64,000 nt of DNA, taken from the NCBI GenBank assembly GCA_964270895.1, contig OZ185437.1. One strand, given 5' to 3'. The first letter of the stretch is position 1; each line of letters starts with the position of its first letter. A program made the position numbers and the translations under genes. The stretch comes from Podarcis filfolensis. Lineage: Eukaryota. The notes below the pieces were generated by a model that was not told the DNA's origin, did not search any database, and saw nothing but the letters and a program-made list of their open reading frames with translations. Shown here in pieces: positions 8,758 through 41,498 of this stretch.

Positions 8758-10727
8758 CAAACCTATCCTTTCTTAAGGAAATCAGCCCTGAGTGCTCACT
8801 GGAAGGACAGATCCTGAAGCTGAGGCTCCAATACTTTGGCCACCTCATGAGAAGAGAAGACTCCCTGGAAAAGACCCTGATGTTGGGAAAGTTGGAGGGC
8901 ACAAGGAGAAGGGGACAACAGAGGACGAGATGGTTGGACAGTGTTCTCGAAGCTACCAGCATGAGTTTGACCAAACTGCGGGAGGCAGTGGAAGACAGGA
9001 GTGCCTGGTGTGCTCTGGTCCATGGGGTCACGAAGTGTGAAACACCCTACCCTAAAGGATTTTCACCACATGCAAAACATGCTAGGATCTGAGTGGCCTT
9101 GGTTAATAATGTGCTTGGAATGTTTTGGAGGAAAGGCTCCTGTTTTGAAACGATCCTATCTATTCAGCCCTTTAATTTTACAATATGTTTGTTGCATGCA
9201 TTAACAATTACATAGCAACTAACAACTTCAAATGAGCGCACGTAGAGAAGATCAAAAGAGATGTTATTCAAGTCCTTTTTGGTTTTCTTTGCAGCTGAAG
9301 TCTACCCCAAAATGTATCACACTTGTTTTTTCCTGGTTACATATATGGCCCCACTGTGTCTGATGGTGTTGGCCTACCTACAGATATTTCAAAAGCTATG
9401 GTGCCGGCAGGTAAGCTTATTTTGCTGTGAGATCCATCTGTGTGATCCATTTCATGATGCCTCTTAAAGACTGACATATTTATGTATTTCAGTAATGGAC
9501 ACAAAAATATATTAATGGTACAGAGTAGAATAATTGTGTATAATTCACATGCAAGCAATCTTTCACCAAAAAAGGAACACCATGTTGTCCAAAACCATCC
9601 AAGCATATGAACTGATATAGCAAAGTAAGTGTTTGCATCCAGTCCACAAATTCTTAGCTTACATTTTCACTCTAAAGAGCTGAAATGAAATTATTCCTGC
9701 TAAGATAGGATCATTTTCTTCCCTGGCTCTTAGTTTACATTTGGATGAAGGCTTGATAAAAGAAATGGAAAAATCACCTAGAACAGAGAAAGAAAAATGT
9801 TGTAAACATTTCAGAAACATTTACATTGCACTTCGGCATGATACATATTATGTTTTCTTGTTTCTTATTTCTGTTGATAGAGTAGATTTAATACATTAGC
9901 AGAAGCTGTTTCTACTTCCACTCATGGAAAATAACATATCTCTGTTTTTCAAGTGCAGTTGCCAAAGTGAACAAGGTGTTATATTAAGGAGAATTAACAC
10001 AGCAAGCCTACTTAACACCTATTAGCTAGTGTGATTTGACTCTTTGCTCAGGTACGTCACATCAAGTAGAGCAGGTGTATCATAGTGGCTTTTTAATATC
10101 ATTGGAAATTGTGCACAATTGGGCACAATTTTTCAGTGATATTAGACCTCATTAAGAGGACCAGTTGCTCATCGGTTATCCCTTGTATTTGCCAACTTGA
10201 TTTTTTTTATTCATAAAAAAGTTCCATATTTTGGACCAATAATCTCTCTGAACATGTTTATGAATCTTTGGCTAAATTAGCAATATGCTCCCATAAACTA
10301 GATCCTTAGGTGTGTCTTATGGGTGCGCTACAGTAGTATAGCAGGTATTAAGTTTAAATTTGCTAAATTTGTAACCCAATTTTACAAAGCCATATACAAA
10401 AGAAAATCAAAATAAAAATGCAACCAATACAATACAATACAATTTAAAATATCATTTTAAAATTCTGCTTTTAATACTCCTAGACGAACCATCATCAGAC
10501 AAAATGTCACACAAAGCACCTAAGTTGCAAGGTGGCCATCTGTTACCTCCTAGTTTTCATCAATTCAGCATCTTTACTGAGTTCCCTCTTCAGGTCTCTC
10601 TTATATCTAACAAAAGGGGGTTCACATTCAGAATGGAGATGCATAAGCAAAATGAACACAATTCTGGAAAGGCATCTTTCATTTCAGCCATAGAAAAGAG
10701 ATTGCATTGAAATCAACATGTGTGTCT

Positions 10728-10774
<47 letters not shown>

Positions 10775-13700
10775 CTCTGGGCCAGTGAGCCTAACAGATT
10801 TTCCCTTTGGGCAAATGGAAATAATTAACATTCCCTTTACTATGCTCTGCTAGATTCCAGGAACTTCATCTGTGATTCAGAGAAAGTGGAAGCCTCTGCA
10901 ATCCACAGCACAAACCCAAAGGCAGAAGCCATCGGCAAATTTCAGGATTAGTGCTGTGGCAGCCGAAATCAAACAAATCCAAACCCGGAGGAAAACAGCA
11001 CGTATGCTCATGGTCGTTCTCTTGGTTTTTGCCCTCTGCTATCTCCCAATTAGCATTCTCAATGTATTAAAAAGGTAACCTTAATACACAATGAGTAATA
11101 ATATGCATCTGTGTGTGATTTTCTAGTCTTTAGGTAGCAGGATGATTCCATTTTGCAGCTGACTAGCCCTATAGCAAAATTAGCATTTGTTTGTTTGTTT
11201 GTTTATCAACTGCCAAGTCAAAAAATATACAATAAAATAATTGGAACATAAAACTTTAAAATCATAAAGTCACAAACAAATGGTCAACAGTGACTCAGAT
11301 CTCTACAAAGTCTCAGGCAGAAATCCTTTCCAGTTCTGTCATGTGAAATCCTTATTTGCTGAAGATGTTGGAGACTGAACCTCGAACGTTCAGTGGACAA
11401 GAAATGAGCTTGAGCAATGAGTTATGGCCCGACCCTGGTATTAGCTTGTGGTTTTTAATTTTGCAGAAAGGCAGGCAAAACTGGAGCTGATGTGAACATG
11501 GCTGGCTTGACTAGTTGTCAACACAGTTGAGCAAGAAGTGTGGAAACACCTCTCTGCTCCTTCAGCTGCTGCTTAAGGCTCAGAAGCAGAGGAGAAGGAG
11601 AAAAGAGGCAGGGTGGTAGAACCTGCTTGAAGAACCAAAGGGTTCTGACCACAGCAAGCCCATGCTTGACATCTTGCAAGAGGCAACATTGGGAACAATC
11701 AAGAACTGCAGGATACACTTAAAGGCACTAGAGGGCACTCCAGTCTTAGGGACTTGAGTGAAGGGGCTTAGGTGAGTTTAGTGTTTCTCTGTAAACAGGA
11801 AATTAGAGCACAAGCAAATATTAATGTTGTCTCAGTGATAAGCCAGGTTCAAGAAAGAATAAGGAAAATAACAGAACTAGAGTATGCACACCCAGCAGAG
11901 GAGTGCAGCCTTGTACTGTGAGGGCAACCAAAGTAGCAAGATTCCACGTAACTTCTTGTCTCTAAGCAGGTCTCCTTGATCAGGGCTAGTGTGGTAAGGA
12001 CCAACATTTGCCTGGTCCAAGACCAGAACAACCCTTGTTCCCCCATCAGCACCACCATTCTCACTTTACACAGAGCATTCAGGCCAGAGGTGACCGGAAA
12101 TATTTCTCAGTGTGTGGTTATCTGAATCAAGGTGTGCGGTAAACTTTAGAAGTCACTTATAAAATTTGCACTCCCTTGGAGAACACGCACAGGCCCTTTC
12201 CTTTAATAATAATGAAAACACTGTGTCCTTGTGGTCCTCTGCATTTTGAGATACATATTCTGTGTACAAATCTTTCAAACTGAAAGCTAATTTGAGATTT
12301 AATCAGATTTCTAATGTCTTCTCATTTCTTCTCTTTTTGTAAGGGTGTTTGGGATGTTCAACAATGCCAATGACAGAGAAACAGTGTATGCCTGGTTTAC
12401 ATTCTCCCACTGGCTTGTATATGCAAATAGTGCAGCAAACCCAATTATTTATAACTTCCTCAGTGGTAAGTCGTTCAGTTCTGCTGCCTTTTATCAATGC
12501 CCCCCCTCCCCGCATGGTTTAGCTACACAGCTCAGAACTACTAGAAGTCTTTCATTCACTGTAATGGGCTCGAGCCCATGGAACTCTTTCCCAACTGAGA
12601 TTAGGCAGCCACCCTCCTTGTTACACTCCAGGCATGTGGCCAAGCCCTTTTTGTTCCAGCATTTTAAGACAGTGTTCCGTCTAACGATTAAAAAAAGGAA
12701 AAAGTTTTATTGCCCCATTGCTTTGTGTTCACCACTTAGGAATTTTGAACAATTACGCAGTATAGAAATGTCTTAAATAAAAAAAACAGTAAATAAATGA
12801 GCCTTTGGGCTTCCCTTATCTTCTTGTTGGGGGGTGGGAATATTTTGTGCCTCCAATTGGCTTCCCTGCTTTGAGTTTCAGGCTGATGCGTAATTTCCTA
12901 TCAGACTATCTGCTGGTGGCTGCCTGAGGGGGTTATGCTTGCACACTACCCTTGCTGCCAACATCAGGACAAGACAGATGAACTCCCTGTCTCTACTGGG
13001 TTTACTGGTAGAACATGAGACTCTTAATCTCAGTGTTGTGGGTTTGAGTCCCACATTGGGCGAAAGGTACCTGCACTGCCAGGGGGTTAGACTAGACGGT
13101 CCTTGTAGTCCCTTCCAACTCTATATTCTCTTCGCTACATGTGCCATGAATCCACCCATTTAACCAAGAGGGGGAATAATACTATGATTTTGCAATGAAC
13201 AGGTTTTTAATGAAGCTATGTCATTATCTCTTTGGGGTTTACCCTATGGTTACCAGATTTTTTCCAATGAATCCAGGGACCCCCCCTTTTTTTTTTGAAG
13301 CTGAGTAGCAACAGGGAGCCAGTAGTGGGGATGGTGAGGCAAAAGACCCTGGGCCCAAGCACACATGCATATTGCATAAAGGTGCAAAGCCCTTCTTTCC
13401 CACCCCGTGAAACATAAATGCACAGAGTTTTTTAAAAATTGGGCAACACCCCCCACCCCCAGCTCCCGAGCCTCCCCCGATCAGTCAAAACAAAGGGGGA
13501 AGGAGATCTGTACCGCCGGACGTCCCCGGTTCCCCTTTGGCAGTGGCAGCAGCAGCAGTCAGCAGCCCGGAGCCAGCCTGGTAGGGCTCTGGCTCTGGCT
13601 GGCTTCAGGAGCTGCTCATGGTCGTGACGCCCGCCATTTTTCCTCTCTAGAAGTCCCCATATGATGCACTGCACACAAGACACATCACATGGGGACTTCC

Positions 13701-16717: not shown

Positions 16718-16739
16718 ATGAACTCCATTCTGTTGCTGG
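16718..16739 (+). CDS. GFRAL: GFRAL exon 1 (start of signal peptide, MNSILLL)
   Basis: gcgATGAACTCCATTCTGTTGCTGG|gtaagt; 22 coding nt, phase 1. Confidence 0.85.
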
Positions 16740-19700: not shown

Positions 19701-20835
19701 GAGGAAATGGAGAACGAAGGGGAAGAATCCGAGGGCAGCGTAGGGGAGTATGACAGTGGCCCGAGAGATTCCATGAGCTTCTCCAGCGAATCAGAAGATT
19801 CCCAGAAGGGGGCGCCGACGGTCAGGGCAAGGGGGGTCCCAGGGGGGACGCACCAGAAACAAGGAGCCAGTGGGGAACCCCAAAGCAGCAGCGGGGGATC
19901 AGGACCAGTTTCCCCACCAGAGCGTAGTGGGGGGGAAGAGTCACATGTGTCAGGGCCAGCGTCTCCTCCAGCGGGGAGAGAAAGTGATTCAGGGCTGACC
20001 ACGCCTCCAACGGAGGGGAGGTCAGTTGCAGCTAGCCCCCCCAGAGGGGGAAGCAGTGACAGCAGCAGTGAAACAGTCAGGAGGAAAGCTGCTGGCTGGG
20101 CGCGCGCGCCAAGTTCAAATGTACAGGCGCGGGGGACAGCAGGAGACCCGGATGGGGAACCAGCTCCTAAAGCCCTCCGGAGGGAGGGGGAAGGCTCAGG
20201 GGATTCAGCGTCAGAAGAGTCTAGAAAGGGCGAGACCCCAACGGACAGGCAGAACCAGAGGCGGAAAGAACAGAGGAAGAGGTGGAGTAAGGCTAGAGTC
20301 TTAAATTGGTGTCTGGGGGAGCATCAGCGGTCTGAGAGTTGAGACGTAGAGACGCTGCGGCTCTGGAAGTGAAACTGAACTTCAATAAAGACTTTTGTAC
20401 TTAACAACGAAGCAGCGTTGGTCCTTTGTGAGCTGGGACCTCGGGCGGCTCTGACACATGTGCATATATATATATATATATATAAAGGTAAAGGTACCCC
20501 TGCCCGTACGGGCCAGTCTTGACAGACTCTAGGGTTGTGCGCTCATCTCACTCTATAGGCCGGGAGCCAGCGCTGTCCGCAGACACTTCCGGGTCACGTG
20601 GCCAGCGTGACAAGCTGCATCTGGCGAGCCAGCACAGCACACGGAACGCCGTTTACCTTCCCGCTGGTAAGCGGTTCCTATTTATCTACTTGCACCCGGG
20701 GGTGCTTTCGAACTGCTAGGTTGGCAGGCGCTGGGACCGAACTACGGGAGTGCACCCCGCCGCGGGGATTCGAACCGCCGACCATGCGATCAGCAAGTCC
20801 TAGGCGCTGAGGTTTTACCCACAGCGCTACCCGCG

Positions 20836-20879
<44 letters not shown>

Positions 20880-23800
20880 TGTATATGTGGTATATCATAT
20901 ATTGACATATTTAATTTTTTTCTTAATTATTGATAGTCTGTTACTATAATATGTCATTTTTTCCTGTATTGAAAATCCCTGTAAAATATGTTTTTTTAAA
21001 ATAAATTAAAAAACAAAACTAATTATGCACACATAAACATTTTCAAAGCCATGAGATTAAAAGTTTGCTCTAGAACCTCCCTTTGAAATAGTGAAGCTCA
21101 GACTGAAGCAAGAACAATGGCAATTGGAGTGAAGTGCAGAATGGAGAAACACCAAAGGTGAAAGAGAAGAGAGCTTAGTCTGCTTAGAAAAAAGACTGAG
21201 TTCCTTGTTCCTTGACGGATCTAAACAGGGGTATCTGAAATTCAGCATGGGTAACCTTGTGTATCTCCTTTACCCTTCCATGCTCTCTACAATAAAACAT
21301 TGGGTAGAAATGCAAAGGAACCACTGCTTATCACCAAGGTTATATTATCTGTTTTGCAGTGCTGGTACTACATTCCATGCATGTAACTGCTTTCCAGACA
21401 TCCAGATGCCAAGAGCTGAGAGAGAGATGTGAAGCTGCAGGAAATGGATGTGAAAGTGTCTGGGCTTTGCTTGAAGAAGTTTGTTGCATTTCAGGTAACT
21501 ACAGAGAAGCCATAGATTGCTCTGTGATTTCAGAGAACCAGCATTCCTTGTCTAATCAGCTTCCATTAAAATGAACACTGAACTGAATTTTAAAAGGGAA
21601 TTCTTCATTTCCCAGACATGTGGTAGGAGAGCTCATTTCCTGTACCCCTATGGAGCTGGGCATCATCACCACACACTTAAATGGAGGGAGCATTCCATAG
21701 AAACACACCCTTCCATGCCTAATTCCACATTCATTGAAATTAATGTGAAAGATCTTATAGACTGAGAGGTGCATATGCCTGCCGGAGCTCCTGCTTACAC
21801 AATGAATTGCTGAGCAGGTTGCTAAACTCTACTTCTTTGCAACTGACTACATACTCAATGAAAACAGGGACTGAAGTATTAAATACAGTTAATAAGGAGA
21901 AAACGCCATTGCATGTGGGCTAATTCTGATCATACAAAAAAAAATGTTCAGGGGTGGGGAGGGGTGGACAAAGGTGTGCAGATAGCCCCAGGGATGTGTT
22001 TCCATGAAATAAAAGTTGTTAAAGCATTCCCTATACATTTTGTGAATACAGGAGTCTCCCCAGTTCAGCAGGGGTTATGTTCCTGGGTACCATGTGTATA
22101 CCTGAAATCACACATAGTGGGGAACACCATCTAAAAGACTTGTAAATTCCCTCTAAACCTCTGGAAACCCTTAAAAAAAACCTTTAAAAACACTGCTTTG
22201 TTTCAAAATCCACCAAACTCCACTACAATCGCTCCCTCCAAACCTACGTTCTTAATATCCAAATTTCCACAGGCCTCAAAGGTCAGTGCAAAGGCTCCTG
22301 GGATTGCTAGTGGTTTTCCAGCTCTTTTTGTGCCATTTTTGCAGTTTCCCCATTCTTTTCAAGCCCTCTTTGCCCTCTTTGCAGTTTACATTGATTGATT
22401 TATTTCCTGGCGCCACACGTATAGACACAGTCACATGGGTGAGTGGGGAGATGCCTATTGTTGGGAAATTTATAAAAGGAGGCAAAAGGAATACAGAATT
22501 TCAGCAGGAAACTACGAGGCATGCACCTATTACAAATCAAACTGAGCCTGCAACACTTTTGCTGGCACAAATGGTTTCCAAGTAATGCATACAATTGACC
22601 CGATAACATCATGAGCACAAAGAATAATGAATGTTCAACAAATAGACTACCTGGAGGGGCTGTTTGTTTGCAGAGGTTTGGAATTAAAAGCTTTGTAACA
22701 GAGTGTGATCATACATAATTACTTTGTCAAAAAAATGGGGGGAAATCTACGGTAAGTGGTTTTTAAGATGAGGATCCATGGCTCTGATCCTATGGGTTGC
22801 TCCTTAAGTTCAGTAATACATTTGAGACTCCATCTTTCCCCATCCCCACCCCAGAATATAGCTCTTGATGTTCTTCTGAACCATTTCCTTACACTTACTG
22901 ACAGATATAACCTATAGCGTGTCAGACTTAGGTGTTAGGCTAAGATATACAGCCAGTTTAAAGTTTTTTTATATATATATTTTATTAAGGGTTTTCTTGC
23001 TTTACAGTGTAAGTGTAATGCCTCGTATTTTTTTCTTCCATGTAACATTTTTACAAATCCGTTTCATTTGATGAGGCATTAGGGAGAGAAGAAAAAAGAA
23101 AGAAAAAAAGAAAGGGGGGTGGAGGGAGGGGAGATGGATGGGGGTGGGGTCGGGTAGCGGTGTTTCTATTATGCTTAATGTATGTAGAGTTTGGTGTCAG
23201 CGTGCTTGTGTTGTTCACTTGTGTTCCTTTGGTGGTGAGAGAGGTTGGGGTTGGCCTAGGGTGTGATTGTTTGTTTGTGATTGGCTGTGGTGATCTTTGT
23301 TTTCGTGTGTGAGTGAGGTGGGTGGGTGTTTTGGATCAGGTTAGCCATATTGATTTGTATGCTGTTGGTGGATTATTGTCGTTGTCCTGTTGGGCTGTGT
23401 ATGTGATAAAGGGGAGCCATACCGGGGTGAAGGTGTCTTCTTCTGTTTGTCCCCGTGTCAGTTTCCAGTTTAAAGTTAATAGAATCTATACTAAATCCCC
23501 AAAGTAGTAGTATCTACAGTATAATATATACAAAGGGGAAATCTCATACTTTTCATTTGAGTGAATCTACGTTGCTAAGAGTTACTCTGCTCAACAATAA
23601 CAGGAAACTATTATTTTTTAAAAAAAATCCAACTCCTACATAAATGAAATTCTGGCATTTTAATTGAACAGCTGAATCAACAGACTGAATCAGCCTCATG
23701 AAACTTGTAAAAGAAATGTACACCAATTTAGCACATGTCCTAAACATGCACAGATTACATGAAAGTCTTGTGACGTTGATAATTGAATTCTCAGTAGCTG

Positions 23801-26800
23801 CTGATCTTTCTCCTGGAGGCCAGATGTTAACACAAAAAGTGAAAAGATAGGGGTGGGTTGGCACTTATATTTTCAACAAGTGTCTGAGTCTTTTAAAAAA
23901 GCAAAAACTAAAATGTCCCCCTGAGCAAGTACATTTTGCATCCTTTCCAAATGCAACCAAGAGGCCACAAAGCAAGTGATGCAGTATGAAACAGCATCTT
24001 TCAGGATGGTGTCCATGACATGGGTATTTTGAGTGAGAAAACCACCACTTCATGTGTTTGCCATCAGTAGTCACATAGTAAAATGGTAGTCACATAGAAA
24101 AACGTGATAGTAAAAAAACAGCAACCAAAATGTTCCACACTTCAGGTAACAGTGCAGCAACTTCCCCCCACATTTTTTTTAAAAGTAATCCCTCTTAGAT
24201 ACACACAGCACATTTACTGATAATTGGAAACTGTTGAGAAAATACTTAATGGAGAGAGTGTTTGATCATCCACAGAAGAAGTACATATACACCGTTCCAC
24301 TTTCCAGTTCAGCAGACAGGACTGAACACGCAGAGAGCTCTTTCTTAAAAGCTACACCCAAGGAATATGCTAGCCCAGAGGTGGAGTGTGGGGTTGAATC
24401 AATAGGATTTTAACTTTGAAAAAGAAAATGGGGGCATCTACACGTACGTACTCACAGGGACATGTTCTGTCGGAGTGTTCTTAATTTGTGGTGGTCTAGG
24501 GTTTTATAGACTAGAGATGACTTCATCCAGTGAAATGGTACCTAGTCCATGAAAGCTTTTGAGCCACTCAAATTTCAAGCCTTTAAGGTGCTACGGGATT
24601 CCTTTCATACAAACTACTTCATACCGTAGTTTATATTGGGTCACAATGTTTATTCCCACTAGACCCATTGAAGTGAATGCCCATGACTAATCAGGTCCAT
24701 TCATTTCAATGGGTCTAGTCCGAGTAAAAGTTAGTTGAAAAGGCAAGATATAAATAAATAGATATAATAACATTAATGAAAGTATTAAGACTCATTCTTG
24801 CATTTGAAATCCAGGCAACAACTACACAGTAAAAGATTCAACCAACTGTAATAAAACAGTCAAGTTCTTAGTTGACCAGTTCCCAGAATTTAAAGACTGC
24901 ACCTGCACTAACGATAACTGCAGCACTACAGCGTTGCTTGGCAAGCAATGTTTTGGGAATAAAGGTAACAGATTATTTTCTTCTCTAGAACAAAATAATG
25001 TAGTGTAATCATGGCCCTGATAAGGCTATTAACAGCTGCTAGAAATGGGAGCCGTATGGTACTTTGAGGATCAGAGGCTCTCAGCCATTTGCTGGGGAAT
25101 GATTGAGGGAGAGGTCATGTCTTGCTTGCATGATGGACATGGGCATCTGGGTTACCACTGGGGGAAGAAGGATGCTGAGCTTTGGTCTGATGCAGCAGAG
25201 CTCTTGTTATGCTCTTATGTTCATTATGGCTTAGAGGTTTAGCTTTGACAAACTATCGGATTCAAATATTATATGGATCTTCGACCTCTAATTAGGAGAC
25301 TGTGACTTTCCTAAGCAATTATAGTAGTCACCGGAGTCCAAAATTCAAGACAAATAAAGTACCATTCAAATCCAGACAAAACCAGTGGATTATTCCCTTC
25401 TCCCCAAGAACCCCCCACACTCAGCTTTTCAGGTTTTTCAGGGGGGCACAGGAAGCTGCAAGAGGGGAGAGGAGGGGAGGGGGACTTCCTTCCATGAACT
25501 TCCCTTAGGATCCAAGCCAATTCATCAACCTTTTAAGACCAGCAATGAACCCTGCAAAATGACAGGGTTATGGACTCCAGCTACCATCTTGATTAACATA
25601 AAAAAGCAGAGAGGAAAAGACTAGTCTTCAATTAATATCTGAAGGAAGAAAAAGTGAGAGCTAAGAGCACACCACGAGGCATAATTCCACCCTTAGGTGC
25701 TGCTGTAGAGAAGGTTCTATCCTGGATCAGCCTCACAAATAGGCAGAGTGAGGCATTCGCCTCAGACAGCAGATGCTTAAAAATGCAGTAAGGACAGAAA
25801 CGTGTGTTTCGCATGACCAGTCCTGCACTCCCATAGCTAGCCTGCTATCTTCAGGTGTAGTGCGGAGGACAGTGTCAAAAGTCAGATTCATTTTCCAGTT
25901 TAGTTGGCTTTTTGTAAATATCATCCTCCGCTTCAGGCAGCAAAATATCTTGGGTTGGCCCTGGTACCATCCCAAATAATCATTTGGGGGGAAATAAAAG
26001 CACAATTCATGTAGCTGCTCCTTTGCTTATCAGTTTTTACAGTCAGCCTGATTGCATTTGAAAGATGCAGCCGTGAGCATGATCTATCCTACTGACTTTG
26101 CGCGCAAATTCTCTTTTGCACAGGGAAATCGAAGCTTTACATGAGCACAGATGTCCAGTTAGGATTCCTGCCACAGACAAAATTGCAAGAGACGGTGCAC
26201 CCAGGCATGTTAGGAACCGACTGCGCGGTTGCAAAGGAAATATGCCGAGGAGATGACACCTGTTTCTTGCCGTACAAGAAATTCCAGAGAATGTGCAGAA
26301 CCAAAGTAGCAAACTGTAGCCTCCATGTGGTGGTACAGCAATGCCTCACAGCATGGAAGGAGTTAAGGAGAACAGTCCTGGGGAGCTGCATATGCCCAGA
26401 ACCACTGCATAAAAGATGCACTAAAATATGGAAGCATATATTTAACAACACATGCGTACAATACACCCAGGAATACCAAGCTTCTGCCATTCAGGAGGAA
26501 ACCTATGCAGGCTTTGATGCAGGTAAATGATGAAGAGTGATCTCTTCAATAACACCAGTTCAAAGATACTGTTCCTAGCAACCTTGAAATGAATAGGTTT
26601 GATGGCACAAAGCGCCACTTTTTACATTTTAATTTAAAAAAAATGCAGAAAAACTGGTGGTGGGTTGGGTTGGGGTTCTCCCTGTTGACACCACTGCCCA
26701 CAAATCCAAGCCCGAAGTTATCATGCTTATACGGAGTCCCAGTGACCTCTGTGTGCATTGCTTACAGGTTCTCATGCATAAGACTGGACTGCTGAAATCG

Positions 26801-29800
26801 ACGTGACTTGCTTCTGTGCAAATATGTGTCAAGTTGTGGCATCACAACTAACTTCTGCTGCATTGTTCTCAAGGTCTTCCATGCAGGATCAAACATAGTC
26901 AGCCACAATGTGGCAGGAAACACCCTAGAATCCTACAAGAGATGTAGAGATGGCCACTAACTTGGACAGGAGTAGATACATCCATGGAAGATCAGGAGCC
27001 ACGAGCCGTGAAGTCTGTGTTCCACCTCCAGTGTTGGAGGATGTAACCAAGTGGATTGGTTACATTTTCCTTCAAAATTATAGGAAGGGCTTTGTATGCC
27101 AGCTTCCTTCATTTGGTGCAAGTATTTTATTTTTGGTATAAACAGGACTCTGTTTTTGCACCTACAGACACACAAACACACACCAAAGGTTTCTGTTTCC
27201 AAAAAGGACAAAGGGGTAGTCTGATCTCTCCAGCACTTATAATTGCTCTCCAAGACATAGAGGGAAGGAAAAGGGAAAACCTGGACATTCTGGGGTCAAA
27301 TCAGAAACCAAGATGGCTCCTGTAACTCTGGGACTGTCCCTGGAAAATTGGGACACTTCGAGGGTATGTCATAGGCAACTGGTTGGGCATGGATAGAACA
27401 GATTGCAGGAACAGATTGGTCTTTGGCCCGATGCAGAAGGGCTTTCTCATGTTCTTGCGTTAATCCATTCTTTTTATAGATAATTTTGTTGCCTCAGCTA
27501 GATACCTCCTCAAATAACCATTGAATCTGGACTGTGTACCTAAGCCCAAAGACAGAGAGTTATTTGCCTTCCCTCTGTTTTTAATTCCACGTTGCTGTAG
27601 CTCGCTGTAGCTCAAACATCATTTACTCAGTTATGTTGTTACTCCTATGTTTGGATTTCTTCTAGGCAATTCAGATAAAATTGAAGCTGATGTGTAAATG
27701 CTAAGAGGAAACAGCAGGTGCAGGAGTCAGCAATTGACATGAACAACACTTGTCCCAACACTTGCAGCTGTTGCATTATGCAATCAGTGCATGTGAGTCA
27801 ATATCAGACAATGCTTTAAATTCATATGGTTTGCATCTATTCTCCTGCCCTGTTCACTGAATCAGGAGCTATGGCAAGCTACAGTTCCCATCCATCCCAA
27901 TGGCAATGCTCAGAAGTGTTTAGCCTTTAAAAATGAAACATAAAAGGCCTCATCTGACCATGCAAACAACATGAACAAAGATGGTAGGGAGATCATCTTT
28001 GCTGCCACCAGCAGAAACCAGCAGGTAACAGTCTGGTGTCTGCAGTCTATGGAGGACCCCTCCCCATCCATGGGTCCTATCAGCTGTCTGAATATACTGA
28101 TTACTGACACCAAGCCTGGTGAAAAGGTAAGGTTGATGTTACTCTGTGCTCCACACTCCAACGTTGTCTTTGGCTATTGGGGTTGATGGAAGCTGGAGTC
28201 AAACAACATGAGCCCCACCTTTGCTCTAAACTAGGAATGCCTCTGCTAAAGGCCGTCAAATAACCTGATCATCATTTTTTTCTTAGCGTTGGGTTTCATT
28301 GCAAACTGCTGCTTCCATTTCAAATCTGCAATTAATTTACAACATGTAATCCGTATAATATGTATCTCCTTCGTTGTAGATCACCTGAAAATAAAATCAC
28401 AGTGGAAGTCATCGTCTCTTTCAAACTATGGTAAACATTAGCCTACTTTTTAAACATTTCTATACCCTGTATCGATTTCAGCTTTGTGGCCCACATAAAT
28501 TATGAGTAATCCAGCTTCCTGACCCCGTGCAGAATGAGACACTGCAAGCTCATTGCAAGAGCTGGAAACCGTGATGGGCTAGGGAAAGTTACAAGGGCTA
28601 AACTGAGAGGTCTGGAGGGCCATATTAAGCCCCCAGGCCTGAAGTTCACCACCCCAATGTATGACAGAATGAATGTTTTTTTCAGAAAATGCAAATAGAA
28701 ATGGGTTGCCTATAGTAGAGTGACCACCATGTAAAAAATTCAAGGGAGAGTTGGAGAACTATTGTGCTTGCAAAATCACTCCTCGTACCCCTATCTCTAT
28801 CGTCTTGTGAACACTTTGCTGTTTCCTCAGAATACAAACACCTGCGCTCCTGCTTCCAAGTCAAAGTGGACTGTGTCAATGACGGAGTCTGTAACAGACA
28901 ACTATCTCGCTACCTTCAAGCCTGCCAAGCTAATGCAACACAGTGCAATTGGAATCGATGCCAAGCAGCTCTGCGGTCCTTCTATGAAAACATGCCTTTG
29001 AACGTAGCCCTGCTGTTGACCTTTTGTGATTGCATGCCGTCAGATGAAAACTGCCGCCAAGCCAAGGGATTCCTTCATGGCACACTATGTGGAGTCAATA
29101 TGGTCCCAGCTCCTTCATGCCTCAGTGTAATTGACACATGCCAAAGAAACGAGATCTGCTGGTAAGTGGAAATACACATTTTTGGTTGACTGCTGGCACA
29201 TGTGTGTTTAATATAAAAATGCACAAGGAGCCCAAGATGATCTCTTATTTATTTGCTCATTCACAATGCACCAAATAATGTTTGCTTTCCAACCTACACC
29301 ACAAGCAAAAGCTGTAAGAGGGTTTTTCTGTGATTTAAGCCTTCCTCCTAACCATCTCTGTCATTCAGGAAATTCATATAGATCTTTTGCAGGACATGTA
29401 CATTTTAACTGTTATTGAATATGCACCCTATAATCCAATCACTGCAAGGTGGTCAAACCGGCAGATATTGCACTTTAAGACTGTGTTACCCCCAAGGCTG
29501 GTCATGGGACTTGGTGCTTTTTAGTAGCATTTTCATCCTGGTCCTGGAGATACTCAGCGGAGTAAAGGATTTGGGATCTTAGCAGGAGCTTCAGAAGGCT
29601 GATACACTCTTCCCTGCTGCTGATACCTCTCCTGCTGTTCCTGTTGCCTCTCCAATGACATAACTCTAATGCTAAAGCACATGAGCACATCTACACAGAT
29701 GTAAAAATAATCAATATGCATAATTTAACATAGAGGTGCATACAGATTAACACTGAAAACACTGCAGGCAAATAAAGCCATAGGAGATGACAGGACTGGG

Positions 29801-32800
29801 CCGCCAGTAGCAGACAGGACCATTCAAGGTCTAAAAGTTCTAGGCTTGCATTGAGAGCAGAGTTAGGGTCAAGTTACAGCTTATTATGTGCCATTCACCC
29901 AGCAATGTCTCTTGTTTATCTTCGATTTTGAGGATCATAGCACATGGAGGCGGGGAAGATGTTAAACCCACCTCCCCAGCTTCAACTTCCCAAACATTGC
30001 TCCCCATTGAGGGTATGACGCTTTAGGGTATGAACATGTCCAAGCTATATGTCCCTTGTTTTGTCACTTACAAGAAATTCTTCATTTTTCTTTCATTTTG
30101 TTATTTGCTAATCTATCCTTCAGCTCTCCCTGAATTATACATGAAAGGGAATAAAGGTAAAGGTAAAGGGACCCCTGACCATTAGGTCCAGTCATGACCG
30201 ACTCTGGGGTTGTGGCGCTCATCTCGCTTTATTGGCCAAGGGAGCCGGCGTACAGCTTCCGGGTCATGTGGCCAGCATGACTAAGCCGCTTCTGGCGAAC
30301 CAGAAAAGCCGTTTACCTTCCCGAAGCGGCACCTATTTATCTACTTGCACTTTGACGTGCTTTCGAACTACTAGGTTGGCAGGAGCTGGGACCGAGAAAC
30401 GGGAGCTCACCCAGTCGCGGGGATTTGAACTGCTGACCTTCTGACCGGCAAGCCTTAGGCTCTGTGGTTTAGACCACAGCGCCACCCGTGTCCCAGATGA
30501 AAGGGAATACCAGGAAGAATAAAATGCATACACATTTCTCTTTCCACAGGGCCAAGTATGAAGCATTTACATCTAAGTGTTTAAAACCCTTCGCCCGACA
30601 ATGCCTTGAAGATAAAGCTTGTTTCGAATCTTTGAATGCAAATGATCTGATGTGTTCTGACAGTGATGAGTGCCGAGCTGCTTATGTCGGAATGTGGGGG
30701 TCTGTCCTTCGAGGAGTCGAGTGTACCTGTGACACAACGCCACTAGCTAAGCAGACTGCATGCAAGTGGTTCCATCATATCCTCCACAGCAAATCCTGCT
30801 TCAGTAAGTTGAACTAACCCAAAGGAGCACCTCTCTCTTAATCAACCTGCCCAGGCCTTACAATTTGCCTTGTACCTTTGCCAGGAGGTCCCATTATGTG
30901 GGAACGAATGAATGAGTCAACCAGTTAACCATTTGCAGCTTAAAGTTTGCTTCATCTGCTAACAGGGGGAAAAAGATTCCTGTTTTTTAATGGCCTTATG
31001 ATAAAATGGGAATTCTAGCAAAATTGGCACCAGGCACACACAAAAGCAAGGCATCAGCAGGTTTAGAGGATTCTCAAGAGTTGCAGAAGTACACAAAACA
31101 TTTAAGGGGGAAAAACTCTACAAGAATTTGTGTTTTTTTAATTACCCAATGGGGACTGAAGATGCTCCGTTGGCACAGGTTACTGGCTGGCTGTTGCGGC
31201 AGTAGGCAAAGGGACAGAAATCTGAGAGGAGGTGGAATGAAGTATCCTGAAAAAGGGCCCAGATGACAGGGTGGAATCCTGGACAGAAGCACTTCACAAT
31301 CCAGCATTTGTTGCAGGCTCTGCTGGCTTTCACACAATTGCTCTCTTTTTATATCCTCTTCAATTTACAGCTCAGATATCAGGTGGAAAAGCTGACCTTT
31401 ACTCATCACGTATGGTTCTACCTGGAAAAATACTTCCTGTAACTGGAGAACGGTCTTCATTGTACAGTAAGTTTGGCTTTTTATAAAAAAAATGAAAAAG
31501 CTCCCATAAAGGTCACTGGAGAGCCACAATTTTATGAGAGGCATAGGCTCCCACAGAAGAAAACAAAAAAAAAGCACCAATCAAGGGGTCAAGGAAAGGA
31601 ATCAAACCAAACTTTTAAATATTATTATTAAGAATCCTGGAAGCAAACTTAACATAGAAACCTCCTTCAGGGATAGTTTTTAGAAGCTGAAAGAAAAAAT
31701 GAAATATGGTGATCAAGACCCTAGGAGATATTAAGCTGAGGACAGTGAATATTTGGTTTTAATTTGTACTATAGTGACTGCATAAAATACTCTTTGATCA
31801 ATGTTTTAATTCTGTTTCCATAATTTAATTTTTAGCGGACACAATCATTATAATGATATACACCTCTTGCATAATCTTGGTGCTGGCGATAATCCTGCTG
31901 ACTTTGTTAAAGACCAGGTAATTGCAATGCTTGTGTGGGGAATGCAGGGCTTCGCAGGAAATGTGTGAGAACGTCCTGTTTCCATAGTGTGTGGCTTCTG
32001 AATCCTGCGGAACCCTTTTCCTATTTGGTTCCAAGACAAACGGAGAGTTTCACTATTGCCAGTAAAATAGAAAAGACACATGAGGAATGCACATGAACTG
32101 AATAAGAAATGAAATGAATTGTGTACTGCATGTATCAGATAAGGCAGTATGTGCTGAGTCAAACTGTAATCTTAAATTTAGGAAAAAGTGTTATTTTATA
32201 CTGTAAAATAAAGTTCAGAACCATAATACAGTCCCGTCCCCTGTATGGAATGCAAGAGAACATGGGTGTAGCCAGGATTTATGTTGGGGGTGGGAGCAGG
32301 ACACCCACCTATCCTGTTCCAGAACCGAGCTACCTGCAATGCGATTGGTCAGTTTGTGGATGCCATGCCTGTCACTCAGTTGGGTTACCAATTGCATCGC
32401 CAGAATATGGCACAACATCATCCAAGTGACCTCAGTGAGCATTTCTAGTTCAAATATTCTGATTATTTCTACTTTTAGTTAAGTATTTTTATTTATTTAC
32501 TTGATTAGGGGGCAGCTGCCCCCCACCCCAGCTACACCCATGCAAGAGAGAAAATTGGGTGGCATAGAGAATATTTATGCATTCCTTCAAGCTCCACCCA
32601 TTTATGGCTTTGGCGCCACCCACCATAAGCATGTAGTTCTGACAGAAAAATTGGCCCTCAGCAAAAACATCCATTCTCCACACTTTAAAAAATAAAATAA
32701 AACAGCAGTTAAGGAGGAACACTTACAATTTATGACCTAAAAGACACCAGCTGCCCTGTAACAGAAGGCGCACCATCCAGTTAATGTTCAGTGGATTTAT

Positions 32801-33123
32801 TTCAATGACAGGCTGTATGTTTAACTTTCTTCTGGGAATCAAAGGGAGCTCAAAGTGCTTAACTGTGACTGGGTCATACCCAACATTTACACAGCAAGTG
32901 ATAATGGCTATTGATTTCGGTCAAGTAGATTGTGTAGCTCGTGTTTCATGGGTATAGAGAATGATGTTAATGCAACACACATTTGTTTGTTTTCAGAGCT
33001 TGCACAACTGTGTATCAGGCCAAGACTGTTTCGCCAGCCCATTTATCCGAGAAGCTCATGATGCCTCGACGACCGTGGATCACCGACTGCGTCGATAATG
33101 CTATTTCAGGCTCTTCTCGTTAG
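16718..33123 (+). CDS. GFRAL: GDNF family receptor alpha-like (GDF15 receptor), complete gene span; 10 coding exons, 1647 nt, 548 aa
   Basis: Exons 16718-16739, 21360-21494, 24815-24964, 26124-26522, 28380-28430, 28831-29161, 30550-30803, 31371-31466, 31836-31917 and 32997-33123 are all GT-AG and phase-compatible. They give signal peptide + 4 Cys-rich GFR domains + TM + tail. Sizes 22/135/331/96 equal human GFRAL exons as recalled, and synteny between HCRTR2 and HMGCLL1 fits. Confidence 0.92.
17312..18419 (-). mobile_element. 5'-truncated L1/Tx1-type LINE, interrupted by a Sauria SINE
   Basis: Minus strand EEGSFYHMWWSCSKVKAYWEMIYNELKKMFKITFVKRPEAFLLGI (ORF2 C-terminal zinc region); (AATAAG)n tail; 11-bp TSD TCAGATAGCCA (17301-17311, 18420-18430); same family as 53929-55051. 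Confidence 0.88.
17973..18310 (+). mobile_element. Sauria SINE nested in L1
   Basis: GACCCCTGACCATTAGGTCCAGTC...TTTACCTTCCCGCTGGAGCGGTACCTATTTATCTAC...TTAGACCACAGCGCCACCCG; 9-bp TSD TCTTAGACC (17964-17972, 18311-18319). Confidence 0.93.
19667..20456 (+). mobile_element. Solo Ty3/gypsy LTR (LTR-B, 790 bp), sense in GFRAL intron 1
   Basis: TGTCAGG...CTCTGACA termini; AATAAA at 20384-20389; perfect 5-bp TSD CATGT (19662-19666, 20457-20461); CpG-rich. Confidence 0.92.
19707..20342 (+). CDS. Putative LTR-encoded ORF (211 aa; acidic/Ser/Gly-rich, Arg-rich C-terminus)
   Basis: Frame is open from the first LTR codon (19668) to TGA 20340-20342; gaaATGG context; coding status unproven. Confidence 0.4.
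   Translation: MENEGEESEGSVGEYDSGPRDSMSFSSESEDSQKGAPTVRARGVPGGTHQKQGASGEPQSSSGGSGPVSPPERSGGEESHVSGPASPPAGRESDSGLTTPPTEGRSVAASPPRGGSSDSSSETVRRKAAGWARAPSSNVQARGTAGDPDGEPAPKALRREGEGSGDSASEESRKGETPTDRQNQRRKEQRKRWSKARVLNWCLGEHQRSES
20484..20837 (+). mobile_element. Sauria SINE (CpG-rich variant) inside (TA)n
   Basis: AAAGGTAAAGGTACCCC start, CTTCCGGGTCACGTGGCCAGC, TTTACCTTCCCGCTGG, CACAGCGCTACCCG end; (TA)n on both sides (20464-20483, 20838-20876). Confidence 0.92.
21360..21494 (+). CDS. GFRAL: GFRAL exon 2 (signal peptide end, first half of N-terminal Cys domain)
   Basis: ttgcag|TGCTGGTA ... ATTTCAG|gtaact; 135 nt; VLVLHSMHVTAFQTSRCQELRERCEAAGNGCESVWALLEEVCCIS. Confidence 0.93.
22048..22465. 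mobile_element. Degraded Tigger/pogo-like MITE
   Basis: Left end CAGGAGTCTCCCCAGTTCAGCAGGGGTTATGTTCC resembles Tigger termini; right end only loosely inverted. Confidence 0.35.
22966..23464 (-). mobile_element. Short 5'-truncated L1/Tx1-like LINE 3' end
   Basis: Minus strand ...EEDTFTPVWLPFITYT...SIWLT*, then 3'UTR and A-rich tail; 13-bp TSD CCAGTTTAAAGTT (22953-22965, 23465-23477). Confidence 0.8.
24815..24964 (+). CDS. GFRAL: GFRAL exon 3 (second half of N-terminal Cys domain)
   Basis: ccag|GCAACAAC ... AATAAAG|gtaaca; 150 nt; GNNYTVKDSTNCNKTVKFLVDQFPEFKDCTCTNDNCSTTALLGKQCFGNK, aligns to human ...CNLSIQYLVESNFQFKECLCTDD...LLGKKC. Confidence 0.92.
26124..26522 (+). CDS. GFRAL: GFRAL extra exon encoding an additional 10-Cys GDNF/GAS1-type domain
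   Basis: ttttgcacag|GGAAATCG ... GATGCAG|gtaaat; 399 nt, phase 1-1, no stops; C-x6-C-x5-C-x10-C-x6-C-x8-C-x14-CxC-x7-C-x11-C. Confidence 0.88.
28380..28430 (+). CDS. GFRAL: GFRAL linker exon (DHLKIKSQWKSSSLSNY)
   Basis: ttgtag|ATCACCTG ... AACTATG|gtaaac; 51 nt, phase 1-1; resembles human linker NVKEDKFKWNLTT. Confidence 0.75.
28831..29161 (+). CDS. GFRAL: GFRAL D2 exon (ligand-binding domain)
   Basis: cctcag|AATACAAA ... ATCTGCTG|gtaagt; 331 nt; SCFQVKVDCVNDGVCNRQLSRYLQAC...FCDC...CGVNMVPAPSCLSVIDTC. Confidence 0.96.
30154..30496 (+). mobile_element. Sauria SINE
   Basis: Typical body; 13-bp TSD ATGAAAGGGAATA (30141-30153, 30497-30509). Confidence 0.95.
30550..30803 (+). CDS. GFRAL: GFRAL D3 exon
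   Basis: ccacag|GGCCAAG ... TGCTTCA|gtaagt; 254 nt; AKYEAFTSKC...CSDSDECRAAY...CTC...HSKSCF. Confidence 0.96.
31371..31466 (+). CDS. GFRAL: GFRAL juxtamembrane stalk exon
   Basis: ttacag|CTCAGATA ... TTGTACA|gtaagt; 96 nt, phase 1-1. Confidence 0.8.
31836..31917 (+). CDS. GFRAL: GFRAL transmembrane exon
   Basis: ttttag|CGGACACA ... AAGACCAG|gtaatt; 82 nt; TDTIIIMIYTSCIILVLAIILLTLLKTR is a hydrophobic helix followed by basic residues. Confidence 0.88.
32261..32542. mobile_element. hAT-type MITE (282 bp)
   Basis: Perfect 12-bp TIR CATGGGTGTAGC / GCTACACCCATG; 8-bp TSD CAAGAGAA / CAAGAGAG (7 of 8 match). Confidence 0.8.
32997..33123 (+). CDS. GFRAL: GFRAL last coding exon (cytoplasmic tail)
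   Basis: ttttcag|AGCTTGC; phase-2 compatible; (R)ACTTVYQAKTVSPAHLSEKLMMPRRPWITDCVDNAISGSSR*; CpG-retaining like coding DNA. Confidence 0.7.
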
Positions 33124-41106: not shown

Positions 41107-41162
41107 CTAAAAAAGAGACAAACAGACAGAGATTTTATGCCTAGTAATTCATTCTAATCATT

Positions 41163-41166
<4 letters not shown>

Positions 41167-41198
<32 letters not shown>
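41167..41198. repeat. (GT)n microsatellite
   Basis: Direct read. Confidence 0.95.
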
Positions 41199-41201
<3 letters not shown>

Positions 41202-41498
41202 ACACATGCATATGGGGGGTGTTAGCAAACTCTACCCTAAGACTAAGATGGGTGAGCTGTTCAGAGAATCCAAAACGCAACCTACTTAATTCGGATTTAA
41301 GTTGGTATTCCATGCACACTTACACTCAGAGATGAATATCACTGAAACTGATGAGCTCATTTCTAAGTAACTGTGCTTAAGTGTGCGGTAAACACTCTAA
41401 AAATCTGGGAAACTTTGAAATCATGAAGGGATTGTCTTCTCGTAGTGTCACAATTTTCTGAGATATGCTGTGTAGCAACTCATGATAAGGCATCCTCC

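What the first reader, a model, noticed from the sequence alone, without database searches (positions are those of the whole stretch)
26124..26522. GFRAL has a fourth GFRalpha-type domain absent from human GFRAL
Seen: a symmetric phase 1-1, 399-nt exon with good splice sites and no stops encodes CAVAKEICRGDDTCFLPYKKFQRMCRTKVANCSLHVVVQQCLTAWKELRRTVLGSCICPEPLHKRCTKIWKHIFNNTC, with 10 Cys in GDNF/GAS1-domain spacing. It lies between exon 3 and the linker exon. Established: human GFRAL (394 aa) has three such domains, and Drosophila GfrL is described with four (D0-D3). Inference: four domains may be ancestral and mammals lost this cassette. Its CLTAWKELRR...CIC...C.KIW segment resembles D1 of GFRA1-3, so mammalian GFRAL 'D1' may really be a D0. 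Being symmetric, it can be skipped to give a mammal-like isoform. It may alter ligand range, RET geometry or adhesion. It may already be in bird or reptile gene models.
Basis: partly seen in the sequence, partly recalled or inferred. Interest (0 to 1): 0.75.

Follow-up and report, generated by a model that had tools for sequence, protein, structure and literature searches.

The report
GFRAL exon encoding the ancestral D1
This is a real coding exon of a lizard's GFRAL gene (the brainstem receptor for the appetite-suppressing hormone GDF15) that adds a fourth cysteine-rich domain; it is already in public gene models of most vertebrates, including many mammals, and is missing only in a few lineages such as mouse and macaque.

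Summary
Window 26124-26522 (+) is a 399-nt, phase 1-1 exon with AG/GT sites. It encodes a 10-cysteine GDNF/GAS1 domain (Pfam 27.9 bits, cut-off 22). It is exon 4 of a 10-exon, 548-codon GFRAL gene lying next to HCRTR2.

The window is a lacertid lizard, about 94% identical in DNA to Podarcis muralis. The P. muralis NCBI-listed GFRAL model already contains this exon (97.7% identity). So do GFRAL models from stingray, gar, amphibians, turtles, crocodilians, birds, marsupials and many placentals.

"Mammals lost it" is wrong:
- The exon is intact in cheetah, rabbit, Myotis and mouse lemur DNA, with dN/dS 0.25-0.45 among placentals.
- It is present in a spliced mole-like mRNA contig.
- It is a decayed relic in macaque and undetectable in mouse.

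A profile of the domain hits only D1 of GFRα1-3 (E about 1e-8) and best matches D1 of arthropod four-domain Gfr-like proteins. The N-terminal domain the literature calls GFRAL "D1" matches no GFRα domain.

I found no paper describing a four-domain GFRAL. The sequence is public in gene models; the interpretation appears to be unreported.

The parts
16718..16739 (+). GFRAL coding exon 1 (start codon and start of the signal peptide; ends in phase 1)
   Evidence: Its seven complete codons read MNSILLL, exactly as at the start of the P. muralis gene in L002 (position 2001). Donor is CTGG|gtaagt.
21360..21494 (+). Exon 2: rest of the signal peptide and first half of the N-terminal Cys-rich domain (the literature's 'D1', here D0-like)
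   Evidence: Acceptor tttgcag|, donor CAG|gtaact, phase 1-1; tblastn to GFRAL models.
24815..24964 (+). Exon 3: second half of the N-terminal domain, phase 1-1
   Evidence: Matches residues 41-84 of the human GFRAL chain 6q2j_C, E 3.4e-5; splice sites.
26124..26522 (+). Exon 4, the finding: one exon holding a short spacer plus a complete GFRα D1-type domain (10 Cys), 399 nt, phase 1-1
28380..28430 (+). Exon 5: 51-nt linker exon, phase 1-1
   Evidence: tgtag|ATCACC...CTATG|gtaaac; tblastn to lizard GFRAL models.
28831..29161 (+). Exon 6: D2, the ligand-binding domain in human GFRAL
   Evidence: PDB 5vz4 GFRAL E 1.8e-34; Pfam GDNF 49.3 bits.
30550..30803 (+). Exon 7: D3
   Evidence: Pfam GDNF 19.3 bits, just under the cut-off for the lone exon; tblastn; phase 2-1.
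31371..31466 (+). Exon 8: membrane-proximal stalk
   Evidence: 96.9% identical to P0067 residues 449-480; boundaries.
31836..31917 (+). Exon 9: transmembrane helix
   Evidence: A hydrophobic stretch of at least 20 residues free of charged or polar residues; boundaries.
32997..33123 (+). Exon 10: cytoplasmic tail and stop codon
   Evidence: 93% identical to the P0067 C-terminus; TAG stop. The ten exon lengths sum to 1647 nt, which is 548 codons plus a stop, the length of P0067.

Best explanation
The stretch is exon 4 of the GFRAL orthologue of a lacertid lizard. It is an ordinary, conserved and probably constitutive coding exon. In a single exon it encodes a complete GFRα-type domain that is the counterpart of D1 of GFRα1-3 and of D1 of invertebrate Gfr-like proteins.

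The full lizard protein reads: signal peptide, divergent N-terminal 10-Cys domain (the literature's 'D1', D0-like by position), this D1-type domain, a linker, D2, D3, a stalk, a TM helix and a short tail. This four-domain layout is the ancestral jawed-vertebrate state and is still encoded in most lineages, many mammals included. The three-domain receptor known from mouse and primates is derived, arising by skipping of this symmetric exon and, in some lineages, by its physical loss (absent in mouse, decayed in macaque).

Shown: the exon, the domain type, its D1 affinity, its distribution, purifying selection in placentals, and inclusion in one mammalian mRNA contig.

Inferred by analogy with GFRα1/2: GDF15 binding stays on D2 and RET contact on D3. 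The D1-type domain is an accessory module that may pack on D3, may add a glycosaminoglycan or partner-binding surface (it is strongly basic in sauropsids and the stingray), and may touch RET CLD1.
For: Exon anatomy and translation.
Pfam GDNF/GAS1 above its cut-off.
Gene identity: D2 exon against PDB GFRAL, E 1.8e-34; exon 3 against GFRAL 6q2j; an HCRTR2 exon upstream at 9246-9464; ten exons summing to 548 codons.
Already annotated: P. muralis model P0067 carries the exon at 97.7% identity, and the locus DNA is about 94% identical with the same splice sites.
Distribution: named GFRAL models from stingray, gar, caecilian, newt, frog, lizards, snakes, turtles, alligator, birds, marsupials and placentals, with all 10 Cys invariant in 18 species.
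D1 identity: the profile against the PDB hits only D1 of GFRα1/2/3, E 2e-8 to 6e-7, with D2 and D3 of the same chains below 5 bits. hhalign to arthropod D1 gives 99.5%, E 3.7e-22, against D0 at E 6.6e-9. hmmsearch ranks D1 > D0 > D3 > D2.
N-terminal domain: it hits only GFRAL itself and leans to arthropod D0 (53% against 14%).
Fold: AF2 pLDDT 87.5, all-alpha; the Foldseek top 25 are all GFRα or GFRAL entries.
Mammals: intact exons in cheetah, rabbit and Myotis and mouse lemur; dN/dS 0.25-0.45; an intronless 557-aa ORF on a 2653-nt Logan contig that includes the exon.
Loss: a macaque relic with stops and frameshifts; no trace in mouse.
Not a recent duplicate of D2 or D3.
Against: There is no transcript evidence for this lizard or any sauropsid; the long models are computational predictions. 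Short sauropsid models without the exon exist, such as Anolis isoform X1 (354 aa) and a 407-aa hawfinch protein, so some skipping cannot be excluded. The link between the N-terminal domain and invertebrate D0 is weak (hhalign probability 53%). The functional role is by analogy only. The multi-domain AF2 model has pTM 0.48 and does not fix where the D1-type domain sits. The domain's charge flips from basic in sauropsids to acidic in therians, so a single conserved partner surface is doubtful.
Confidence: 0.85

Rival explanations
1. One reading: four domains are ancestral and the cassette was lost once, in mammals as a group, leaving a mammal-wide three-domain GFRAL.
For: The canonical mouse (393 aa) and primate (394 aa) proteins lack it. 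The review PMC7299427 describes GFRAL as 9 exons, 394 aa and three domains.
Against: Bilby, sugar glider and Tasmanian devil models carry it. So do cheetah, cat, whale, dolphin, pig, rabbit, Myotis, rhinoceros, hedgehog, mole, rat, hamster, deer mouse, gerbil, mole-rat and squirrel models. The exon is intact in four placental genomes, one of them a primate, with dN/dS 0.25-0.45.
Confidence: 0.03
2. In the lizard itself the exon is a regulated cassette. A substantial share of transcripts skip it and produce a mammal-like three-domain receptor alongside the four-domain one.
For: Its length is a multiple of three and its phase is 1-1, so skipping keeps the frame. Long and short models coexist in several mammals with an intact exon, such as pig P0106/P0178 and the mouse lemur, whose exon is intact yet unannotated. 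Some short sauropsid models exist.
Against: The lizard donor CAG|gtaaat is close to consensus, whereas the placental donors are gttggt or gttggg. Every full-length (>=480 aa) sauropsid, amphibian and fish model retrieved includes it. The short sauropsid models are mostly truncated entries.
Confidence: 0.2
3. It is a pseudo-exon or a gene-prediction artefact: an open frame carried into models by homology but not part of a functional protein.
For: Most support comes from automated models. The exon is dead in macaque and absent in mouse, so the receptor can work without it.
Against: All 10 Cys are kept across roughly 450 million years (my estimate of the cartilaginous fish-mammal split), with no stops or frameshifts in any sequence examined outside macaque. 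Exon divergence is 1.8% against 3.8% in flanking introns versus P. muralis. dN/dS is below 0.5 in placentals. A spliced mRNA contig contains it. The predicted fold is confident.
Confidence: 0.02
4. It is a lineage-specific internal duplication of D2 or D3 within reptile GFRAL.
For: All GFRα-type domains share one fold, and Foldseek's single best hit is GFRα1 D3.
Against: There is no BLASTP similarity to the window's own D2 or D3 exons. The domain is present far outside reptiles. Its profile prefers D1 by about 30 bits over D2 or D3 of the same chains.
Confidence: 0.01

Closest known systems
D1 of GFRα1, GFRα2 and GFRα3 (PDB 7aml, 6q2n, 4ux8, 5mr4, 6q2o, 6q2s)
   Same: Same Pfam family and 10-Cys pattern, and the same position directly N-terminal to D2. 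It shares the conserved segment around C..AW..L..T.L..C.C and the basic K/R-C-x-K/R-I-W/Y motif. The profile E-value is 2e-8 to 6e-7, on D1 only. In GFRα1/2, D1 packs on D3, adds about 150-fold to heparan sulfate affinity, is reported to have NCAM as a D1-specific partner, and in GFRα2 touches RET CLD1 (PMC10661694; PMC6760901).
   Different: Here it sits behind a further N-terminal Cys-rich domain, in a transmembrane rather than GPI-anchored receptor. Sequence identity is only about 20-25%. None of the D1 functions has been tested for GFRAL.
Invertebrate four-domain Gfr-like proteins (Drosophila DmGfrl D0-D3; PMC3527400)
   Same: The order of four GFRα-like domains is the same. The exon's domain matches arthropod D1 at hhalign 99.5%, E 3.7e-22, and the GFRAL N-terminal domain leans to D0. 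The motif that paper marks in fly D1 as heparin-binding-like appears to line up with the lizard segment around K-R-C-T-K-I; this is my reading by comparing motifs, not a fly alignment.
   Different: The invertebrate proteins are about 800-1300 aa with a long mucin-like stalk and a GPI anchor, and insects lack GDNF-family ligands. The D0 correspondence is weak (53%).
Canonical human and mouse GFRAL (394 and 393 aa; D1-D2-D3; PDB 5vz4, 6q2j)
   Same: It is the orthologous gene. D2 matches at E 1.8e-34, and the modelled lizard D2-D3 superposes on the crystal structures at TM 0.90-0.92. The N-terminal domain, linker, TM helix and tail are the same.
   Different: The canonical form lacks this exon's 133 residues between the N-terminal domain and the linker. 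Its 'D1' is not the D1 homologue.
Mammalian GFRα4, which lacks D1 while chicken GFRα4 has it (from my own knowledge of the family, not tested here)
   Same: It is a precedent for lineage-specific loss of the D1 domain in a GFRα-family co-receptor that still signals.
   Different: It is a different paralogue, and there the loss affects mammals generally. In GFRAL the loss is patchy (mouse, macaque).
isoGFRAL, the exon-6-skipping mouse splice variant (PMC7299427)
   Same: It is the only GFRAL splice variant discussed in that review, and it shows the gene is alternatively spliced.
   Different: It truncates the protein after D2 by a frameshift. It has nothing to do with this in-frame D1 exon.

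Membership tests
GDNF/GAS1 (GFRα-type) cysteine-rich domain, Pfam PF02351 | Match to the family profile above the curated gathering score | tested here: met
   27.9 bits against 22, profile positions 1-87 of 87, residues 33-110.
GDNF/GAS1 (GFRα-type) cysteine-rich domain, Pfam PF02351 | Ten conserved cysteines in the family's spacing | tested here: met
   Ten Cys in the window peptide; all ten columns invariant in 18 species.
GDNF/GAS1 (GFRα-type) cysteine-rich domain, Pfam PF02351 | Compact all-alpha fold of about five helices | tested here: met
   AF2 model pLDDT 87.5 with six helical segments; the Foldseek top 25 PDB hits are all GFRα or GFRAL, TM up to 0.75. This is a prediction, not a solved structure.
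GDNF/GAS1 (GFRα-type) cysteine-rich domain, Pfam PF02351 | Canonical five-disulfide pairing | not testable with these tools
   Needs a solved structure or disulfide mapping.
GFRAL orthologue (gene level) | D2 and D3 closer to GFRAL than to GFRα1-4 | tested here: met
   D2 exon: GFRAL E 1.8e-34 against GFRα1 E 6.5e-8. The model's D2-D3 superposes on 5vz4 at TM 0.92, 51% identity.
GFRAL orthologue (gene level) | Single-pass transmembrane anchor with a short cytoplasmic tail instead of a GPI anchor | tested here: met
   Hydrophobic exon 31836-31917 followed by a 42-codon tail exon.
GFRAL orthologue (gene level) | Conserved neighbourhood next to HCRTR2 | tested here: met
   The window 9246-9464 frame matches orexin receptor 2 at E 1e-21. 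That HCRTR2 neighbours GFRAL in mammals is from my own knowledge.
GFRAL orthologue (gene level) | Binds GDF15 and activates RET | not testable with these tools
   Needs binding and signalling assays.
D1-type domain of GFRα receptors | Specific sequence affinity to D1 rather than D2 or D3 | tested here: met
   The profile hits D1 of seven GFRα1/2/3 chains at E 2e-8 to 6e-7, with D2 and D3 of the same chains at or below 5 bits.
D1-type domain of GFRα receptors | Lies directly N-terminal to D2, separated by a flexible linker | tested here: met
   Exon order 4-5-6 in the window and the protein alignment.
D1-type domain of GFRα receptors | Packs against D3 and contributes to a heparan sulfate site or a RET CLD1 contact | tested here: inconclusive
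   The multi-domain AF2 model has pTM 0.48 and superposes on three-domain GFRα chains only at rmsd 11-14 Å. The domain is basic in sauropsids (+5 to +10) and acidic in therians.
Four-domain D0-D3 Gfr-like architecture (invertebrate type) | Second domain homologous to invertebrate D1 | tested here: met
   hhalign 99.5%, E 3.7e-22; 46-62 bits on the second domain of 12 arthropod proteins.
Four-domain D0-D3 Gfr-like architecture (invertebrate type) | First domain homologous to invertebrate D0 | tested here: inconclusive
   hhalign 53%, E 1.3e-4 to D0 against 14% to D1. hmmsearch favours D0 in 8 of 10 proteins, but at only 7-15 bits.
Four-domain D0-D3 Gfr-like architecture (invertebrate type) | Long mucin-like stalk and GPI anchor | tested here: not met
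   GFRAL has a short stalk and a TM helix. It therefore resembles that domain order but is not a member of the invertebrate Gfrl group.

The most novel reading that the evidence does not exclude
GFRAL, alone among vertebrate GDNF-family co-receptors, keeps the bilaterian D0-D1-D2-D3 layout. The three-domain receptor on which GDF15-GFRAL structural and pharmacological work (human and mouse) has been based is a derived form, reached independently by loss of the D1 exon in Mus and by its decay in Old World monkeys. What the literature calls GFRAL 'D1' is a D0. If so, most vertebrates, including rat, rabbit, pig and cat, can make a four-domain receptor whose D1 has never been studied. I found no paper stating this, but Airaksinen 2006 and Hätinen 2007 could not be read.
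Probability: 0.55. Interest if true: 0.65.

Novelty: new variant of a known kind. Interest (0 to 1): 0.5.

Why it matters
GFRAL is the only established receptor for GDF15 and a drug target for obesity, cachexia and nausea. Reviews and structural papers describe it as a 394-aa, three-domain protein (PMC7299427, PMC10661694, PMC6760901).

The data here suggest this description fits mouse and macaque, and by inference apes, but not most vertebrates. Several species that I understand to be used preclinically (rat, rabbit, pig, cat) encode a constrained extra D1-type domain. This raises three concrete, testable questions:
- Do the long and short forms differ in GDF15 affinity, RET assembly or glycosaminoglycan binding?
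- Do antibodies or ligands raised against the three-domain form behave the same on the four-domain form?
- Why was the exon lost twice?

It also corrects the domain naming used when GFRAL is compared with GFRα1-4.

As a scan result it is modest. I rated the architecture 'new variant of a known kind' only because I found no paper describing a four-domain GFRAL.

Tried and rejected
- Single-sequence PDB search with the exon peptide gave only E 0.08-0.46, too weak alone. An 18-species profile was needed.
- BLASTP of the exon against the window's D2 and D3 exons found nothing, which rules out a recent internal duplication.
- Foldseek on the single-domain model confirms the fold but cannot separate D1 from D2 or D3; its top hit is GFRα1 D3.
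- The multi-domain AF2 model (pTM 0.48) does not place the D1-type domain reliably, so no geometric claim is made.
- dN/dS between the window and P. muralis rests on only 7 differences and is uninformative. Placental comparisons were used instead.
- DNA could not be retrieved for bilby and tarsier (sample file too large), and Peromyscus was not on record. The marsupial and haplorhine-base states therefore rest on protein models or are unknown.
- Seven literature searches found no description of a four-domain vertebrate GFRAL.
- The two most relevant evolution papers, PMID 16912471 and PMID 17157029, are not held.
- The short Logan proteins P0003 and P0001 are not transcript evidence for the exon: P0003 reads like a genomic open frame running through the exon, and P0001 is an NCBI gene-model fragment of Phrynosoma.
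Full report

Yes. One search shows a polypyrimidine-rich acceptor ending in cag at 26121-26123. The exon runs 26124-26522 (399 nt) and is followed by the donor gtaaat. Open frames of this size occur by chance in 64 kb, so the case rests on homology. Pfam PF02351 (GDNF/GAS1) matches end to end at 27.9 bits against a cut-off of 22. A HMMER scan of 1.84 billion representative proteins finds 52 relatives at E<=1e-3, the best at 5e-40.

**2. What gene is it in?**

On the same strand, the exon at 28831-29161 matches the D2 domain of human GFRAL in PDB 5vz4 at E 1.8e-34, against 6.5e-8 for GFRα1. The exon at 24815-24964 matches residues 41-84 of the GFRAL chain 6q2j_C. The exon at 30550-30803 is D3.

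An orexin receptor 2 exon lies upstream at 9246-9464. From my own knowledge, HCRTR2 is also GFRAL's neighbour in mammals.

Using the Podarcis muralis protein P0067 and its locus L002 as guides, I placed ten coding exons:
- 16718-16739
- 21360-21494
- 24815-24964
- 26124-26522
- 28380-28430
- 28831-29161
- 30550-30803
- 31371-31466
- 31836-31917
- 32997-33123

Their phases are compatible, and their lengths sum to 1647 nt, which is 548 codons plus a stop. P0067 served as the full-length stand-in.

The window is about 94% identical in DNA to the P. muralis locus, introns included, so it comes from a closely related lacertid.

**3. Is it already known to databases?**

Yes. P0067, which NCBI lists as 'GDNF family receptor alpha-like [Podarcis muralis]', contains the exon at residues 103-235 with 97.7% identity. 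The L002 locus has the same splice sites, and the exon is 1.8% diverged against 3.8% in the flanking introns.

Named GFRAL models with the domain come from:
- stingrays, spotted gar and lungfish;
- a caecilian, a newt and a frog;
- many lizards and snakes, including a 2013 king cobra entry;
- turtles, alligator and dozens of birds.

A scan of all proteins fetched shows that every full-length (>=480 aa) non-mammalian model has it.

**4. Did mammals lose it?**

No. With the bilby protein as query, long models covering about 95% of it appear for sugar glider and Tasmanian devil. Among placentals they appear for cheetah, cat, whales, pig, rabbit, Myotis, rhinoceros, rat, hamsters, deer mouse, gerbil, mole-rat and others. 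In the alignment these carry the same domain at the same junction with all ten cysteines. The 393-398-aa models of mouse, gibbon, panda and manatee differ only by clean absence of this exon.

In genomic DNA the exon is intact, with AG and GT sites, in:
- cheetah (L003 15691-16101);
- rabbit (L004 8158-8565, acceptor shifted by 3 nt);
- Myotis (L005 9193-9606);
- mouse lemur (L007 10100-10510), a primate whose annotated model skips it.

Pairwise dN/dS among four placental orders is 0.25-0.45. This is similar to the N-terminal domain exon (0.35-0.65) and looser than D3 (0.14-0.20).

A 2653-nt Logan contig from run SRR22936724 carries an uninterrupted 557-codon GFRAL reading frame, most like mole sequences, that includes the exon. 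Because the genomic gene has large introns, this is a spliced mRNA.

By contrast:
- Macaque DNA (L008 22658-23043) holds a relic with at least five in-frame stops, at least one frameshift and three lost cysteines.
- The mouse locus shows nothing above chance.

Loss is therefore patchy. It happens to affect mouse and an Old World monkey, the closest relative of humans examined. I did not look at human sequence, and the human state is only inferred from macaque.

**5. Which domain is it?**

A profile of the domain from 18 species (A2) hits only D1 of GFRα1, GFRα2 and GFRα3 in the PDB, at E 2e-8 to 6e-7. D2 and D3 of those same chains score at or below 5 bits, and GFRAL's own D2-D3 chain scores E 1.7.

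A profile of the GFRAL N-terminal domain (A3), the literature's 'D1', hits only GFRAL itself.

The weaker hits of the big search are arthropod Gfr-like proteins. PMC3527400 describes the Drosophila member of this group as having four domains, D0-D3. Against alignments of their first two domains, hhalign gives:

| GFRAL profile | Arthropod domain | Probability | E-value |
|---|---|---|---|
| Exon's domain (A2) | D1 | 99.5% | 3.7e-22 |
| Exon's domain (A2) | D0 | 95.8% | 6.6e-9 |
| N-terminal domain (A3) | D0 | 53% | 1.3e-4 |
| N-terminal domain (A3) | D1 | 14% | 1.9e-3 |

hmmsearch gives the same order. Pfam finds three GDNF stretches in the long forms and two in mouse and gibbon.

For the D0 half it is plausible but weak.

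**6. Structure and likely working**

The domain alone folds with confidence (pLDDT 87.5) into an all-alpha bundle, and its 25 best PDB matches are all GFRα or GFRAL entries.

In a model of the whole P. muralis ectodomain, D2-D3 superpose on human GFRAL crystals at TM 0.90-0.92. The position of the D1-type domain is unreliable (pTM 0.48), and the D0-D1 spacer is predicted disordered.

What follows is inference by analogy. In GFRα1/2, D1 is not needed for ligand binding. It packs on D3, raises heparan sulfate affinity about 150-fold, has been reported to bind NCAM, and in GFRα2 touches RET CLD1 (PMC10661694; PMC6760901).

The lizard domain is strongly basic (net +7, pI 9.0), as in other sauropsids and the stingray. 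Therian versions are acidic. That would suit a glycosaminoglycan-binding role in sauropsids and a changed or relaxed role in mammals.

The near-consensus donor in the lizard, against gttggt or gttggg in placentals, suggests constitutive use in the lizard and easier skipping in mammals. No transcript data were available for the lizard.

**7. Novelty**

The review PMC7299427 describes GFRAL as 9 exons, 394 aa and three GFR-like domains, with one known variant that skips exon 6. PMC10661694 says family members have two or three domains. Seven full-text searches found no four-domain vertebrate GFRAL. Two key evolution papers were not available.

The architectural reading and the pattern of loss appear to be unreported.

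**8. Verdict**

This is a real, ordinary, conserved exon of a known gene. Interest is moderate. It changes how a well-studied drug target should be described outside mouse and Old World primates, but it needs expression and function data.

Noticed in passing
window 9246-9464 (+): An open frame matching orexin (hypocretin) receptor type 2, residues about 186-268 of the PDB chains, E 1e-21. The 5' part of the window therefore carries the end of HCRTR2, in the same orientation as GFRAL.
   Followed up: partly
L008 22658-23043 (macaque), L007 10100-10510 (mouse lemur), L006 (mouse): The D1 exon is a decayed relic in macaque (stops, frameshifts, lost Cys). It is intact but left out of the annotated model in mouse lemur, and undetectable in mouse although rat, hamster and deer-mouse models have it. 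This implies at least two independent losses.
   Followed up: yes
L003 21408-21743, L004 16968-17327, L005 15572-15925, L001 (D2 exon): Synonymous divergence of the D2 exon among four placentals is only 0.07-0.12, against 0.3-0.8 for the other GFRAL exons of the same species pairs. This unusually strong nucleotide-level conservation is unexplained.
   Followed up: no
alignment A2 (the D1-type domain in 18 species): Net charge of the domain is +5 to +10 in sauropsids and the stingray but -2 to -7 in therian mammals, with rat at +2. This is a marked electrostatic shift on the mammalian stem.
   Followed up: partly
L003 near 16101, L005 near 9606, L007 near 10510, compared with window 26523: The placental copies of the exon have weak donors (gttggt or gttggg), while the lizard has gtaaat. 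The rabbit acceptor AG is mutated and an AG 3 nt downstream is used, removing one codon.
   Followed up: partly
window 20485-20837, 30151-30494, 51222-51606, 54433-54738: Four copies of an interspersed repeat of about 350 bp (76-87% identical to a copy in the P. muralis locus). Two of them lie in GFRAL introns.
   Followed up: no
proteins P0078, P0079, P0190, P0196 (owls, harpy eagle, parrot) and P0207 (MetaClust, carnivore-like): Some predicted isoforms skip exon 3 (half of the N-terminal domain) but keep the D1 exon. P0207 joins D0-D1 directly to the stalk and TM helix without D2-D3. None of these was checked against transcripts.
   Followed up: no
protein P0004 (Hemicordylus capensis GFRAL model), residues about 190-215: This model lacks two of the ten cysteines and four residues in the conserved I-W-K segment, unlike all other species. 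It is probably a model or assembly error.
   Followed up: no
window 62001-64000: GC content rises to 0.53 with positive GC skew at the 3' end of the window, possibly a CpG island of the next gene.
   Followed up: no
window about 10694-10825, 849-1047, 41111-41332: Simple repeats: a TGC-type run that reads as poly-Cys, and GT/CA dinucleotide runs that read as C-V repeats in the six-frame scan.
   Followed up: no
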